Positions 1,765 to 12,360 of a DNA stretch of 64,000 nt are shown piece after piece (position 1 is the stretch's first letter; each line of letters starts with the position of its first letter). Where the stretch lies: the IMG/VR virus record IMGVR_UViG_3300034072_001021, positions 1-64,000 of that record. One strand, 5' to 3'. A model generated the notes under the pieces. That model saw nothing but the letters and a program-made list of their open reading frames with translations, was not told the DNA's origin and did no database searches. The translations under genes and the position numbers were made by a program.

Positions 1765-2391
1765 ATGGAACTCTGGCAATCGATGGGCTTGCGCTGGAAG
1801 TTCATCTGGTGTGGTGTAGGTAGTCGTGAGGTGCCTGACGAGATCATTAAGCTTCAGATCTGGGTCGGGCACTGCATGGCATTGTTGGGTGGTGTCCTGT
1901 CCACTGGAGATGCTCCTGGATCGGACAGCAACTTTACAATCGGATATGAGCGTGGTAAGTCTGAAGACATGCCGCCTGCTCAGATCTACTACACCTGCCT
2001 TAAAAACCAAAAGGGATTGAGTCACGACCCCGTTAAAGGTTATCACGAAGCTGAACAGTATTCGACACACGAACACTCTAAGGCAATTGCGTTTAAAGCC
2101 AGAGGTTCTTTTGAAGGACTGTTTGCATCTGGCATTGGTCTTCATTCCCGTAACCCAATGCAAGTATTGAGTCACACACTCGAACATCCCGTTTGGATAA
2201 TCGTGTTTTACGCTCAGCCAGTCGGCAAACGTGGGAACGTAAAAGGTGGAACCAACACTGCTGTTAAAGTGGCCACCATGTACGACGTAAAGAAAGTGAA
2301 TCTTTACGTGGAAGAGCAGCGTGATAAGTTTGTCACTTGGCTCACCGATCAACTAAACAAGAAAGGCATACCAGTGCCTTCGATGGAGTAG
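1765..2391 (+). CDS. SLOG-superfamily (DprA/YpsA-like) nucleotide-binding protein
   Basis: Motifs WCGVGSREVP and LSTGDAPGSD resemble the SLOG G.GSR..P / SG.A.GAD signature. Confidence 0.6.
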   Translation: MELWQSMGLRWKFIWCGVGSREVPDEIIKLQIWVGHCMALLGGVLSTGDAPGSDSNFTIGYERGKSEDMPPAQIYYTCLKNQKGLSHDPVKGYHEAEQYSTHEHSKAIAFKARGSFEGLFASGIGLHSRNPMQVLSHTLEHPVWIIVFYAQPVGKRGNVKGGTNTAVKVATMYDVKKVNLYVEEQRDKFVTWLTDQLNKKGIPVPSME

Positions 2392-2393
2392 CA

Positions 2394-3059
2394 ATGTCGT
2401 CGAATAAAAAGGGATTCTTCCTGTGTCTTGAGGGGATCGATGGGGCTGGCAAGACCACGCTGCGCGAATGGATTGTCGAGTGGTTCAAGTCCCAAGGAAT
2501 TACCCCTGTCGTGACTCGTGAGCCTGGCGGTACACCGTTGGCCGAAAAGATCCGCAACATCATCCTGGCCGAACGTGACGAACACATGCCGCCGATGGCC
2601 GAAACTCATCTCTTCATGGCAGCTCGCTCCGTTCATCTGGAGAACCTGGTTAAGCCACGAGTTGAAGCAGGTGATCTGGTTATCAGTGATCGTTTCTGCG
2701 ACAGTACCTTCTGCTACCAGGGTGCTGGCCGGGGTATTCCACTCGGCCAACTGATCACCATGCACGAGATGAGTTTCGGTCGCACCTATCCGGATCTGAC
2801 TCTGGTACTCGACGGTCGTCCTGAAGTCTTCCGTGAGCGTATGGCCGTACGTGGTGAACAAGGTCTCAACCATTTCGACCGCATGGGTCAAGAATTCCAC
2901 GATGCATCTCGAGCAATGTACCGTGGTTTTGCAGAACAGTATCCTGAGCGCTACGCGTTGATCGATGCCGAGCAACCGTTCGATCAAGTCTGCTCCCAGG
3001 TGATCACTCACCTGATGCGTATCGATGGCATTGTTCGCCGCCGTCCTGAAGTTAACTGA
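2394..3059 (+). CDS. tmk: thymidylate (dTMP) kinase
   Basis: FLCLEGIDGAGKTT P-loop, TREPGGTPLAEKIR, ISDRF, YQG, PDLTLVLD; ATG at 2394 after GGAG. Confidence 0.95.
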   Translation: MSSNKKGFFLCLEGIDGAGKTTLREWIVEWFKSQGITPVVTREPGGTPLAEKIRNIILAERDEHMPPMAETHLFMAARSVHLENLVKPRVEAGDLVISDRFCDSTFCYQGAGRGIPLGQLITMHEMSFGRTYPDLTLVLDGRPEVFRERMAVRGEQGLNHFDRMGQEFHDASRAMYRGFAEQYPERYALIDAEQPFDQVCSQVITHLMRIDGIVRRRPEVN

Positions 3060-3061
3060 AT

Positions 3062-3093
3062 AGGAGAGTGGTGGCACTGCCACCACTCTCTTC
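3062..3093 (+). terminator. stem-loop terminator
   Basis: GAGAGTGGTGGC-ACT-GCCACCACTCTC directly after the tmk stop. Confidence 0.6.
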
Positions 3094-3114
3094 TGCCTTT
3101 TGACGGAGATAATC

Positions 3115-3507
3115 ATGTCTAACAAAGCACAGAAGCTGGCCGAGGCAATCACTGCAATTGAGACCAATATAACCTTGGTTGAGCAATTGGCTCAGGAAGC
3201 ACTGGCAGAAGGCGACTTCAATTTCGTTGATGACTTCCGTGATAAACGAGGTGGTAACCTTCAAGAAACGGGTGTCCTCATGGCAGCATTTGCCAAACGC
3301 ATGGCAGGTCATCTGAACACTCTCGGTAACGTCCTCTATATCCGCGAGATGGAAAGTACCAAGACGCCTTCCGACTGGCGCATGCACGCCGATAACGGCA
3401 AGAAGGTCGATGCTATCAAATCACTGAGGGAATGGACTGGTTCTAATTTCCTGTCCCTTTCCGAAGCTGTCAGCGTAGTTGACGCATATATCCAAAAACC
3501 GTTCTAA
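3115..3507 (+). CDS. hypothetical protein (possible ribosomal L7/L12-like C-terminal motif)
   Basis: GGAG SD; C-terminus KKVDAIKSLREWTGSNFLSLSEAVSVVD resembles the KI.AIK..R..TG..L.EA motif. Confidence 0.65.
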   Translation: MSNKAQKLAEAITAIETNITLVEQLAQEALAEGDFNFVDDFRDKRGGNLQETGVLMAAFAKRMAGHLNTLGNVLYIREMESTKTPSDWRMHADNGKKVDAIKSLREWTGSNFLSLSEAVSVVDAYIQKPF

Positions 3508-10086: not shown

Positions 10087-10962
10087 ATGAAACAATACCT
10101 CGACCTCGTCCGTCTGATCCGCGACACCGGCAACTACAAGGGTGACCGTACTGGTACCGGCACCACCTCCATCTTCGGCCACCAGATGCGTTTCAATCTG
10201 GCTGATGGTTTTCCGCTGGTGACTGCCAAGCACACCCACCTGAAGTCCATCATTCACGAACTGCTCTGGTTCCTTCAGGGTGAGACCAACATCCGCTATC
10301 TGAAGGAAAACGGCGTCCGTATCTGGGACGAGTGGGTCAAGGAAGACACTGCAGAATATCGTGACATGGTGCCTGCTGAGATCCAGGTGGCGTTGGTCAA
10401 GTTCTTCAAAGCCACAGATTTCAATGCCATTTCGGTAGATAATCTAGAGACACCTAACCATTATCATCTTCATCGCAATGAGGATGATTCTGAGATAGTC
10501 CTCGAGTATTCCAGTGACGAATCTTGGAAGAATGTATATCGTGACATTATCGGTGGCGAGCCACGTGTACTGATCGCAGGTGAACTCGGTCCGGTCTATG
10601 GTTCGCAATGGCGTAGCTGGCCTGCCCCTGATGGCAAGTCAATTGATCAGATCGCCAACCTGATCGAAATGCTCAAGAAGAACCCTGACAGCCGTCGTGC
10701 CATCGTCTCGGCATGGAACCCGGCTGAAGTGGACAACATGGCCCTGCCGCCATGCCACACCATGTTCCAGTTCTACAGCAACTTCATGTCGCTCGAAGAG
10801 ATGGAAGATGTCATCGGTAAGGCTCATCTGACTGCCGACTACGTTCGTTTCGTCAATGAGCATGAGTGCGAGACCAACGATGCGGTGTACGATGCTGCAT
10901 TGCTGTTCTGTCAGGAGCATGATCTGCCGCGTCGTAAGCTCAGCTGCCAACTGTACCAGCGT
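10087..10962 (+). CDS. thyA: thymidylate synthase, exon 1
   Basis: [56 protein letters not shown]; codon 292 (CGT, Arg) ends at 10962. Confidence 0.95.
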
Positions 10963-12063
10963 AAACATCACTGCGCCCTTGTAGCGTGAGCTGCATTGAA
11001 TAACCTCTCTAAAACGGGAAACTCTCTTAGGAGACAATCCGTTGCTAACCCCGTAACTCGTTCCCTTCTAGTCAAAGGAGACGAGTATGTATCACGTTTA
11101 CGTAATCACTGATTTAAATACTGGGAACTATTACGTCGGAAGTACTGGAGAAATAGATAAGCGTCTAACACGACACGAAAATGAACTTCGGTCTGGCAGA
11201 CATCATAACCTTATCCTCCAGCAACTATTCGACGCCGGACACGATCTACGTGTATCGACCTACGAGTTCACGACTCGTGAGGAAGCTTACGCCAATGAGG
11301 ATCATTTGATCAACCGTGGTCAGATGAACCGACTCTGTATTAACATAGGGTCGAGCGCTATTGGTGGAGACAACCTCACCAGAAATCCAAATCGAGAAGA
11401 GATTATCTCTCGAATTGGTGAATCTGTCAGAACTCGGAACGAGTCTCTTGGTGAAGATGGTAGAAGGGCAGCTTACGGAAGAACAGGCCAACAAAACGGC
11501 ATGTTCGGAAGAAGTCATTCAGATGAATCTAAACGACTCATGTCGGAAGCTAATCTGGGTAACTCGTACGCTAAAGGAAGTATTCGCTCTGAAGATCAGA
11601 GAAGATTATTGTCTACCTTCGCCTCAACACGAACAGGGCGAGCTAACCCATTTTACGGGAAATCTCATTCTGAAGAGACCAGGAAGAAACTGTCGGAAGC
11701 CCGTAAAGGGAATGTACCACCGAACACACTCAGTGTGATAATCGATGGTGTCATTTATCCTTCGCTGGCCGAGGCAGGCCGGCAATTGGGAATTCCAGTC
11801 CCAACGATCCATTACCGGATCAAAAGCAACAACCCAAAATACAGTGGATACGAGTTACGGGAAACGCCCAACGACTAAGGAAAGGCGCCTCATTGATGAT
11901 AAAGGCGAACCGAGTACTGTAGGGTCCGAGTGGACTCGAAATGGGAGGAGTCTCCAAGGATGGAGGCTGTGATATAGTCTAAACTACATGGTGACATGTA
12001 GCGGTCAAGAACTGAAGAATCTTGACGGGTTAGGTCTAACGAACCTAGCTGAAGGTCGGCATG
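10963..12063 (+). mobile_element. group I intron (subgroup IA2), 1101 nt, with homing endonuclease in P6
   Basis: Exon 1 ends in U and the intron ends in G. IGS CACT-GCGC (10969-76) pairs exon 2 AGTG and exon 1 GCGT. P2 TGTAGC-GTGA-GCTGCA; P3 CCTCTC/GGGAGG; P4 AACGGG/TCCGTT; P6a CCCGTAACTCGT/ACGAGTTACGGG; P7 GACTA(11873)/TAGTC(11975); P7.1, P7.2, P8 and P9 hairpins present. Splicing restores YQR-SADVFLG in frame. Confidence 0.93.
11087..11878 (+). CDS. intron-encoded GIY-YIG homing endonuclease (I-TevI/I-BmoI-like)
   Basis: HVYVITDLNTGNYYVGST, KRL.RH; two NUMOD3-like repeats (GMFGRSHSDESKRLMSE, PFYGKSHSEETRKKLSE); C-terminal NUMOD1-like HTH (IDGVIYPSLAEAGRQLGI); stop overlaps P7. Confidence 0.92.
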   Translation: MYHVYVITDLNTGNYYVGSTGEIDKRLTRHENELRSGRHHNLILQQLFDAGHDLRVSTYEFTTREEAYANEDHLINRGQMNRLCINIGSSAIGGDNLTRNPNREEIISRIGESVRTRNESLGEDGRRAAYGRTGQQNGMFGRSHSDESKRLMSEANLGNSYAKGSIRSEDQRRLLSTFASTRTGRANPFYGKSHSEETRKKLSEARKGNVPPNTLSVIIDGVIYPSLAEAGRQLGIPVPTIHYRIKSNNPKYSGYELRETPND

Positions 12064-12360
12064 AGTGCCGACGTCTTCCTCGGCGTGCCGTTCAACATCG
12101 CCAGCTACGCTCTGCTGACCATGATGGTTGCACAAGTGACCAACCACGTCGCTGGTGACTTTATCTGGACTGGGGGCGACTGCCATCTGTACGCTAACCA
12201 CAACGAGCAGGTAGAGCTTCTGCTGACCCGTAAGACCCATCCACTGCCGACCATGAAGATCAATCCGGAAGTCAAGGACATCTTCGGGTTCCAGTTCAGC
12301 GATTTTGAACTGGTTAACTATGTCAGTGAGCCGGTGATCTCAGCGCCGGTGGCTGTCTAA
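12064..12360 (+). CDS. thyA: thymidylate synthase, exon 2
   Basis: [19 protein letters not shown]...GDCHLYANH...APVAV; spliced product 390 aa. Confidence 0.95.

What the first reader, a model, noticed from the sequence alone, without database searches (positions are those of the whole stretch)
10963..12063. Group IA2 intron in thymidylate synthase at the R|S site with a P6-encoded GIY-YIG endonuclease
SEEN: the intron interrupts YQR|SADVFLG, exactly 21 nt (AGT GCC GAC GTC TTC CTC GGC) upstream of the FLG| position. P1/P10 (IGS CACT-GCGC), P2-P9 and P7.1/P7.2 can be traced. The endonuclease ORF sits between P6 and P7, with its stop codon inside P7. KNOWN (from memory): the T4 td intron is inserted after FLG and has I-TevI in the P6 region. 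The Bacillus mojavensis thyA intron (I-BmoI) is inserted 21 nt upstream of the td site and has its ORF at a different intron position. INFERENCE: this element combines the Bacillus-type insertion site with a td-type ORF location, in a proteobacterial jumbo phage, suggesting independent intron/HEG assembly or long-range transfer. In nucleus-forming phages such endonucleases may also act as weapons against co-infecting phages.
Basis: partly seen in the sequence, partly recalled or inferred. Interest (0 to 1): 0.62.

Follow-up and report, generated by a model that had tools for sequence, protein, structure and literature searches.

The report
Self-splicing intron in jumbo-phage thyA
The thymidylate synthase gene of this 259-kb nucleus-forming-type jumbo phage is interrupted by a genuine T4-td-like self-splicing group I intron that carries its own DNA-cutting "homing" enzyme; it is real, but it belongs to a widespread, already known kind of mobile element.

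Summary
Window 10963-12063 is a 1101-nt group IA2 (T4 td-like) intron. It splits thyA between the Arg codon of YQR and the Ser codon of SADVFLG, 21 nt upstream of the T4 td site. All helices are present and covary across 12 related introns. The 263-aa ORF (11087-11878) is an intact GIY-YIG + 3xNUMOD3 + helix-turn-helix endonuclease without the I-TevI zinc finger. It lies in the P6a loop, and its last 29 nt form P6a', P6', J6/7 and the 5' arm of P7.

Metagenome contigs join 10962 directly to 12064, the predicted junction. They are either an intron-less allele or spliced RNA.

"R|S site plus P6a-loop endonuclease" is not an unusual hybrid. It is the commonest form of a family also found in:
- Bacillus phages (Bobb, LY2)
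- the T4-like Aeromonas phage Aes508
- Clostridium and Deinococcus genomes
- other chimallivirus-type jumbo phages (Erwinia Joad/RisingSun, Dickeya JA29, Vibrio phiKT1028)

In 12 of 47 phiKZ-like records the same site is occupied, but the endonuclease sits in P9.1.

Verdict: new member of a known kind, of moderate interest.

The parts
10087..10962 (+). thyA exon 1 (292 codons, ends ..LSCQLYQR; last base U pairs with G of the internal guide sequence)
   Evidence: ORF reading; Pfam Thymidylat_synt 1.4e-67, profile positions 1-154
10963..12063 (+). group IA2 (td-like) intron, 1101 nt, ends in G
   Evidence: Rfam partial hits; alignment with T4 td and 10 other introns; helix table and covariation; contigs joining 10962 to 12064
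10969..10976 (+). internal guide sequence: CACU (P10 partner of exon 2 AGUG) and UGCGC (P1 partner of exon 1 GCGU plus the first intron base)
   Evidence: the P1 arm GCGC is kept in all 14 R|S-site introns read
10980..11045 (+). 5' core: P2 hairpin (10980-10995, GUGA loop), P3 5' arm (11004-11009), P4 (11013-11018 / 11038-11043), P5 (11023-11034), P6 5' arm (11044-11045)
11050..11061 (+). P6a 5' arm (12 nt), pairs with 11850-11861 inside the end of the endonuclease ORF
   Evidence: compensatory double changes against the relative L019
11056..11086 (+). hairpin that sequesters the endonuclease Shine-Dalgarno (AGGAG 11076-11080); its 5' arm overlaps the P6a 5' arm
   Evidence: fold -13.2 kcal/mol, z -3.5; arms covary in L019; analogous hairpins in most family members, including T4 td (PMC2988022)
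11087..11878 (+). homing endonuclease gene, 263 aa: GIY-YIG domain, three NUMOD3 repeats, C-terminal helix-turn-helix; one Cys only, so no zinc finger
   Evidence: Pfam; PDB 1i3j 8e-10 and 1mk0 1.4e-3; catalytic Y16/G18/R26/H30/E71/N86 invariant in the alignment; dN/dS 0.13 against L019
11850..11877 (+). core elements encoded inside the ORF's 3' end: P6a' (11850-11861), P6' (11866-11867), J6/7, P7 5' arm (11873-11877)
11879..12063 (+). 3' core: P7.1, P7.2, P3' (11943-11948), P8, J8/7, P7' (11975-11979), P9, P9.1, P9.2, terminal G 12063
12064..12360 (+). thyA exon 2 (98 codons, [18 protein letters not shown]..)
   Evidence: Pfam Thymidylat_synt 3.3e-36, profile positions 169-266

Best explanation
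Window 10963-12063 is a mobile group IA2 intron of the T4 td type. It is inserted in the thymidylate synthase gene after the Arg codon of the conserved YQR|S(A/C/V)D motif.

Splicing (inferred from the anatomy). The pre-mRNA folds into the P1-P9.2 ribozyme. Exogenous guanosine attacks after U10962, which sits in the U-G pair of P1. The freed exon 1 then attacks after G12063, with P10 aligning exon 2. This yields an uninterrupted ThyA reading frame (..LYQR-SADVFLG..).

The endonuclease (inferred by homology). The P6a loop carries an I-BmoI-like GIY-YIG enzyme. By analogy with I-BmoI, it should bind exon-2 DNA just downstream of the insertion site with its NUMOD3 and helix-turn-helix modules. 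It should then nick both strands a few bases upstream, at the CAGCG motif whose G lies at -2, in intron-less thyA alleles. Recombinational repair from the intron-plus copy would then copy the intron in (homing). The intron-plus allele should be immune, because the base at -2 becomes U (intron end ..CAUG).

Regulation (inferred). A hairpin hides the endonuclease ribosome-binding site, and the ORF's 3' end is part of the ribozyme core. So, as in T4 td, translation of the endonuclease and splicing probably have to be kept apart in time.

What is shown: sequence anatomy, covariation, domain content, purifying selection, presence/absence polymorphism, and contigs with the exact junction. What is inferred: splicing chemistry, cleavage position and homing.
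For: - Exon frames and Pfam coverage either side of the junction.
- td-like core alignment.
- All helices found in 10 introns with compensatory changes, for example P7 GACUA/UAGUC becoming GACCA/UGGUC (Joad) and GAGCAU/GUGCUC (phiKT1028).
- Formal covariation on the 3' half: 85.2% paired against 64.1% shuffled, 34/44 pairs compensatory, 0/500 shuffles as high.
- Unconstrained MFE of the ORF-deleted intron recovers P2, P3, P4, P5, P6a, P7.1, P8, P9, P9.1 and P9.2.
- The closest relative L019 keeps the structure through paired changes in P2, P6a, P8, P9, P9.1 and P9.2. Its core is 85% identical over the window's core coordinates, while the thyA exons are 58-67% identical.
- Endonuclease domains and catalytic residues; dN/dS 0.23/1.73.
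- Contigs in runs X5 and X9 join 10962 (or 10961 plus C) to 12064, with 78-95 nt on the shorter side.
- Intron-less alleles occur in relatives: Erwinia phage pEa_SNUABM_10 and phiKZ itself, against 12 intron-plus phiKZ-like records.
- I-BmoI requirements and the G-2U change in intron-plus alleles: PMC3161791, PMC3664794, PMC5009752.
- RBS hairpin and ORF/core overlap in td: PMC2988022. Hairpin here.
Against: - No RNA evidence. No listed run is on record as RNA, and the joined contigs may be DNA of an intron-less relative rather than spliced mRNA.
- Rfam does not reach its gathering score.
- P1 has only 4 exon base pairs plus one, and P10 only 4. P10 is weaker still in L019.
- P7.1 pairs in only 66% of cells on the automatic alignment.
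- The cleavage site and immunity are argued from I-BmoI, which is at best about 40% identical by inference. Its own sequence could not be fetched here.
Confidence: 0.9

Rival explanations
1. Decaying element. The ribozyme still splices because ThyA depends on it, but the endonuclease no longer cuts, or the intron no longer moves. It would then simply be inherited vertically in this lineage.
For: - The endonuclease has diverged a long way from that of the nearest relative (dS 1.7). The intron therefore has a long history in this lineage and is not a fresh arrival.
- The end of the ORF drifts: the stop lies in P7 here, but between P6a' and P6' in L019 because of a 1-nt indel.
- Degenerate copies exist elsewhere: L128 has 6 stops inside the match.
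Against: - The ORF is intact.
- All catalytic residues are kept.
- dN/dS is 0.13.
- Presence/absence polymorphism occurs among close relatives and in the metagenomes.
Confidence: 0.12
2. Not an intron. A free-standing endonuclease gene has split thyA into two separately translated genes, like mobE in Aeh1 nrdA. The two polypeptides would assemble without splicing.
For: - GenBank relatives are annotated as two thymidylate synthase CDS plus an endonuclease.
- An ATG (12061) lies in frame just before exon 2.
- Free-standing endonucleases sit next to unsplit thyA in T5-like phages and in several contigs.
Against: - A complete td-like ribozyme flanks the ORF, with strong covariation.
- Exon 1 has no stop at the junction and runs on 27 nt into the intron.
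- The ATG before exon 2 is part of the conserved intron end ..AAUG, and no Shine-Dalgarno precedes it.
- Aes508 td is already annotated as a joined CDS at the same site.
Confidence: 0.03

Closest known systems
T4 td intron with I-TevI (group IA2)
   Same: - Same host gene.
- Same core, about 75% identical, with all helices including P7.1/P7.2 and P9.1/P9.2.
- ORF in the P6a loop, with its 3' end supplying P6' and J6/7.
- A hairpin hides the ribosome-binding site (PMC2988022).
- GIY-YIG nuclease domain and helix-turn-helix DNA-binding domain.
   Different: - The insertion site is 21 nt upstream: after R of YQR rather than after FLG. The guide sequence differs accordingly (GCGC against GCCU).
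- The endonuclease has extra NUMOD3 repeats and no zinc finger: one Cys only, 29% identity.
- It should therefore cut next to its insertion site, not 23-25 nt away.
Bacillus mojavensis thyA intron with I-BmoI (and the Bacillus phage beta22 thy intron)
   Same: - Same insertion position relative to the shared cleavage site, deduced from PMC3161791, PMC3664794, PMC5009752.
- The endonuclease lacks the zinc finger and uses NUMOD modules (PMC5009752, PMC3664794).
- The intron-plus allele has U instead of the critical G at -2 (PMC3161791).
   Different: - According to PMC5009752 the I-BmoI ORF lies at a different intron position from I-TevI. Here the position is the td one.
- The B. mojavensis and beta22 sequences and the original papers could not be retrieved, so no direct alignment was made.
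Unpublished-as-intron thyA introns of other jumbo phages: Erwinia Joad/RisingSun, Dickeya JA29, Vibrio phiKT1028, IMG/VR contigs L019, L020, L023
   Same: - Same site, same guide sequence and same P6-loop GIY-YIG ORF.
- Endonuclease 39-73% identical.
- Core 69-95% identical in the 5' part and 61-88% in the 3' part (pairwise alignments).

   Different: - The host gene is only 35-74% identical (ThyA exon 2).
- The ORF end overlaps the core to different extents.
- The records annotate two thyA CDS, not an intron.
phiKZ-like thyA intron (OMKO1, SL2 and 10 further records)
   Same: - Same insertion site.
- td-like core.
- The best-scoring endonuclease match in the phage collection, 43-44% identity.

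   Different: - P6 is a 20-nt hairpin loop.
- The ORF lies in the P9.1 loop, with a 9-bp stem closing directly around the start and stop codons.
PhiPA3 gp210 intron (Birkholz et al. 2024, PMC11620839)
   Same: [quoted passage not shown]
   Different: - That one is an HNH enzyme in an RNA polymerase gene, and interference has been shown experimentally.
- Here it is a GIY-YIG enzyme in thyA, and nothing has been tested.

Membership tests
Group I intron, subgroup IA2 (td-like) | Removal restores a continuous conserved reading frame | tested here: met
   YQR|SADVFLG; Pfam profile 1-154 and 169-266 on the two exons; contigs with the exact junction. The exons were searched separately and were not joined.
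Group I intron, subgroup IA2 (td-like) | 5' exon ends in U paired with G of an internal guide sequence (P1); intron ends in G | tested here: met
   GCGU|A with UGCGC; G12063. The same holds in all 14 R|S-site introns read.
Group I intron, subgroup IA2 (td-like) | Conserved core P3-P8 with the P3/P7 pseudoknot and J8/7, supported by covariation | tested here: met
   Helix table. 85.2% paired, 34/44 pairs compensatory, 0/500 shuffles as high. P3 has 7 different arm sequences that all pair.
Group I intron, subgroup IA2 (td-like) | Extra helices P7.1/P7.2 between P7 and P3' | tested here: met
   P7.2 is 94% paired in its outer part. P7.1 is present here (CGCCU/AGGCG) but pairs in only 66% of cells on the automatic alignment.
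Group I intron, subgroup IA2 (td-like) | Match to Rfam RF00028 at its gathering score | tested here: inconclusive
   Two partial hits, 24.7 and 20.2 bits against 50 (E 7.6e-4 and 0.016). The model cannot span the 792-nt ORF.
Group I intron, subgroup IA2 (td-like) | Guanosine-dependent self-splicing | not testable with these tools
   No RNA run holds the locus.
GIY-YIG homing endonuclease (I-TevI / I-BmoI family) | N-terminal GIY-YIG domain with the catalytic Tyr, Arg, His, Glu and Asn | tested here: met
   Pfam 5e-10; PDB 1mk0; Y16, G18, R26, H30, E71 and N86 invariant in 9 sequences.
GIY-YIG homing endonuclease (I-TevI / I-BmoI family) | Modular C-terminal DNA-binding region (NUMOD3, helix-turn-helix) | tested here: met
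   NUMOD3 7.5e-18 in three stretches; I-TevI_DNA-bd 1.9e-7; PDB 1i3j 8e-10.
I-TevI subtype | Zinc finger in the linker that sets the 23-25 nt cleavage distance | tested here: not met
   One Cys in 263 aa. The Cys-rich block of I-TevI and the Aes508 enzyme is replaced by NUMOD3 repeats.
GIY-YIG homing endonuclease (I-TevI / I-BmoI family) | Site-specific cleavage of the intron-less allele | not testable with these tools
   Only the candidate target can be named: CAGCG(U)|AGUGCC, with G at -2.
thyA R|S-site (I-BmoI / beta22-type) intron | Insertion after the Arg codon, 21 nt upstream of the td site | tested here: met
   The position of the I-BmoI site was deduced from PMC3161791, PMC3664794 and PMC5009752.
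thyA R|S-site (I-BmoI / beta22-type) intron | Endonuclease ORF at the I-BmoI position in the intron | not tested
   The sequence could not be retrieved. The literature says only that it differs from I-TevI's position (PMC5009752). Here the ORF is at the td position.

The most novel reading that the evidence does not exclude
The thyA intron endonuclease of nucleus-forming jumbo phages is not merely selfish. Like PhiPA3 gp210, it would be imported into the phage nucleus and cut the thyA of co-infecting intron-less relatives, giving the intron-plus phage a competitive edge.

In this lineage the shared 5' arm of P6a and the ribosome-binding-site hairpin would act as a switch. That switch would release endonuclease translation only once the long-range P6a has formed.
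Probability: 0.2. Interest if true: 0.6.

Novelty: new member of a known kind. Interest (0 to 1): 0.4.

Why it matters
- It corrects annotation. In this phage and at least a dozen cultured jumbo phages, "two thymidylate synthase genes plus a hypothetical protein" is one gene with a self-splicing intron.
- It shows that the I-BmoI-type insertion site is the commoner of the two thyA sites. At that site the endonuclease gene occupies either P6a or P9.1, or is absent. This is a clean natural series for studying how endonuclease genes colonise introns.
- It supplies ready-made intron-plus and intron-minus pairs among cultured nucleus-forming phages: OMKO1 or SL2 against phiKZ, and RisingSun or Joad against pEa_SNUABM_10. 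These pairs could test whether the interference competition shown for PhiPA3 gp210 applies to other introns and to other endonuclease families.

Tried and rejected
- Rfam at gathering threshold on the whole window: no hit. Partial hits appear only at the E-value threshold. A whole-genome RF00028 search found no second intron.
- Megablast of the locus against the phage collection found only two 53-54-nt matches, at the start of exon 2.
- The original papers could not be read: Bechhofer 1994, Edgell and Shub 2001, Liu 2006. The 21-nt relation was therefore rebuilt from later papers plus the T4 record.
- The B. mojavensis intron was not obtained:
  - The nine-sequence endonuclease alignment was too diverse for a pattern scan.
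  - The six-sequence one found 29 bacterial loci, none from B. mojavensis.
  - A family-wide genome search centred on a Bacillus genome hit nothing.
  So I could not establish which loop holds I-BmoI.
- No RNA run holds the locus. The joined contigs cannot tell spliced RNA from an intron-less DNA allele. I lean towards DNA, because the endonuclease region has zero depth in run X5.
- I first read the higher identity of the intron core than of the exons as recent transfer. I withdrew this because the endonuclease dS is 1.7, so constraint on the RNA explains it as well.
- The JA29 3'-core identity was computed from a wrongly placed J6/7 anchor. This was corrected for the alignment.
- The exons were not joined for any search.

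Full report
**What is there**

The + strand ORF 10087-10989 reads as thymidylate synthase up to ..LSCQLYQR (last codon CGT, 10960-10962) and then runs into unrelated sequence. A second frame resumes at 12064 with [18 protein letters not shown].. and ends at 12360. Pfam Thymidylat_synt matches profile positions 1-154 on the first piece and 169-266 on the second. I searched the two exons separately by reference and did not join them.

Between the exons lie 1101 nt that follow a U and end in G. They hold a 263-codon ORF (11087-11878) with a GIY-YIG domain, three NUMOD3 repeats and the I-TevI-type DNA-binding domain. The two I-TevI domain structures, 1i3j and 1mk0, are its only PDB relatives.

**Is it an intron**

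Rfam finds nothing at its gathering score. On the local stretch it reports two pieces of RF00028. One covers P3-P6 just before the ORF (11013-11090, E 0.016). The other covers P7-P9 just after it (up to 12001, E 7.6e-4).

I read the T4 td intron from NC_000866. I also collected related thyA introns from phage records and contigs. Aligned, they share the td core motifs almost letter for letter.

A per-intron helix search found P1, P2, P3, P4, P5, P6a, P7, P8 and P9 in all ten introns. The arm sequences differ but stay complementary. Examples:
- P3 is CCUCUC/GGGAGG here, CUCCAU/GUGGAG in JA29 and CUAUUCC/GGAAUAG in phiKT1028.
- P7 is GACUA/UAGUC here, GACCA/UGGUC in Joad and GAGCAU/GUGCUC in phiKT1028.

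A formal count was made on a MAFFT alignment of the 3' halves of 12 introns. It gives 85.2% paired cells against 64.1% in shuffles and 34-41% when one strand is slid. 34 of 44 pairs have changes on both sides, and 0 of 500 shuffles reach any measure.

An unconstrained fold of the ORF-deleted intron recovers P2, P3, P4, P5, P6a, P7.1, P8, P9, P9.1 and P9.2. Helix coordinates are listed under parts.

**The junction in nature**

No RNA run holds this locus. Contigs were laid from four metagenome runs:
- In run X5 a contig joins 10962 directly to 12064. It skips exactly 1101 nt, with 95 nt on the shorter side, and is about 97% identical to the exon.
- In X5 and X9, contigs join 10961 to 12064 with C in place of T10962.
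- In X5 the endonuclease region has zero depth.

I therefore read these as an intron-less allele of a close relative rather than spliced RNA. Either reading fixes the boundaries where the structure predicts them.

The same call shows low-depth contigs that skip only the ORF. In one (11056 to 11851, with two letters between) P6a closes as a simple hairpin.

**The genome**

The window is the first 64 kb of a 259,140-bp IMG/VR record with terminal repeats. It has 51% G+C. It encodes homologues of four phiKZ proteins:
- chimallin gp54 (E 1e-17)
- PhuZ gp39 (E 2e-21)
- RNA polymerase subunits gp55 and gp74

It is therefore a chimallivirus-type jumbo phage. Its ThyA exon 1 is at most 45% identical to those of cultured phages, the nearest being Erwinia jumbo phages. 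The host is unknown. The DNA comes from subsurface and soil metagenomes.

**How it compares**

*Site.* T4 td reads ..YQRSVDVFLG|LPFN, so this site is 21 nt upstream. The literature supplies three facts:
- I-TevI and I-BmoI nick the same positions (PMC3161791).
- The critical G is at -2 for I-BmoI (PMC3664794, PMC3161791).
- For I-TevI it is the last base of CAACG, which lies 23 nt before the td site (PMC5009752).

Together these place the I-BmoI site after the same Arg codon. Here the homologous motif is CAGCG followed by U, then the intron. The intron-plus allele has U at -2, as described for I-BmoI (PMC3161791).

*ORF position.* In T4 td and here the ORF lies between P6 and J6/7 and ends inside the core. 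PMC5009752 states that I-BmoI lies elsewhere in its intron. I could not retrieve that sequence.

*Endonuclease type.* It has one Cys and no zinc finger. NUMOD3 repeats take the place of the I-TevI linker. It is therefore I-BmoI-like, and I predict that it cuts next to its own insertion site.

**Distribution**

The same site, guide sequence and P6-loop GIY-YIG ORF occur in:
- Erwinia phages Joad and RisingSun, Dickeya phage JA29 and Vibrio phage phiKT1028, all jumbo phages
- IMG/VR contigs of 254 and 307 kb
- Bacillus phages Bobb and LY2
- the T4-like Aeromonas phage Aes508, where td is already annotated as a join
- Clostridium and Deinococcus genomes

In phiKZ-like phages the site is the same, but P6 is a small hairpin and the ORF sits in the P9.1 loop. 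12 of 47 Phikzvirus records carry this intron, and phiKZ itself does not. Erwinia phage pEa_SNUABM_10 is also intron-less.

The element is therefore not an unusual hybrid. It is a typical member of the commonest thyA intron family. Within that family, intron core and endonuclease gene are demonstrably separable.

**The nearest relative**

L019 has the same intron. Over the window's core coordinates the intron core is 85% identical. The endonuclease is 70% identical in nucleotides and 73% in amino acids, and the exons are 58-67% identical. Differences in P2, P6a, P8, P9, P9.1 and P9.2 are paired.

Endonuclease dN/dS is 0.23/1.73. It is therefore under purifying selection. The intron is old in this lineage, so the conserved core reflects RNA constraint rather than recent arrival.

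**Regulation**

The endonuclease Shine-Dalgarno (AGGAG, 11076-11080) is buried in a hairpin (11056-11067 with 11075-11086; -13.2 kcal/mol, z -3.5). Similar hairpins precede the start codon in most family members, including td. In td the hairpin delays translation and so protects splicing (PMC2988022).

Here and in L019 the 5' arm of this hairpin is also the distal half of the P6a 5' arm. In L019 all three partners have changed together, the one inside the ORF by synonymous changes. This suggests two mutually exclusive pairings, which is an inference.

**Verdict**

This is a new member of a known kind, of moderate interest. Its value lies mainly in correcting annotation and in the intron-plus and intron-minus pairs it points to among cultured nucleus-forming phages. 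A full-text search found no paper that combines thymidylate synthase, intron, GIY-YIG and jumbo. The PhiPA3 paper mentions thymidylate synthase introns only in other phages.

Noticed in passing
G000 about 76312-77094 (+), outside the window (L012:1078-1860): A second GIY-YIG/NUMOD3/I-TevI_DNA-bd endonuclease gene. It is free-standing and overlaps the end of a dCTP-deaminase-like gene. No group I intron signal lies near it.
   Followed up: partly
L001 (SL2) 2219-3309; L002 (OMKO1) 2193-3282: The phiKZ-like thyA intron is at the same R|S site but has the endonuclease in the P9.1 loop, where a 9-bp stem closes around the start and stop codons. 12 of 47 Phikzvirus records carry it. phiKZ (PHIKZ235) is intron-less, and exon identity between the two groups is only 88-90%.
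   Followed up: partly
L009 (Aeromonas phage Aes508) 1965-3015: This R|S-site intron carries an I-TevI-like endonuclease with the Cys-rich zinc-finger block. The intron therefore sits where an I-TevI-type enzyme would cut rather than where it would bind. This hints at how the two thyA insertion sites are related.
   Followed up: no
window 11056-11086 with 11050-11061 and 11850-11861: The ribosome-binding-site hairpin and P6a share a 5' arm. In L019 all three strands changed in step, which suggests alternative pairings that couple endonuclease translation to intron folding.
   Followed up: partly
window 10360-10560 and 10790-10930: ThyA exon 1 has 292 codons for 154 Pfam profile positions, so the protein has large lineage-specific insertions. 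These are shared in part with Erwinia jumbo phages and are longer still in L019 (380 codons).
   Followed up: no
L101 / L128 (Bacillales MAG): A short ORF-less intron (about 300 nt) lies at the same R|S site of thyA. A degenerate GIY-YIG gene with 6 stops lies upstream of the gene.
   Followed up: no
window 12064-12130: The first 53-54 nt of exon 2 are 89-94% identical to thyA of Microbacterium phage Magritte and Erwinia phage pEa_SNUABM_10. The rest of the gene does not match at DNA level. This is the presumed endonuclease binding site.
   Followed up: no
L005 (Salmonella phage SP01), L022, L024, L103: Related GIY-YIG endonuclease genes sit free-standing directly after an unsplit thyA in T5-like phages, two IMG/VR contigs and a Methylophilaceae MAG.
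   Followed up: no
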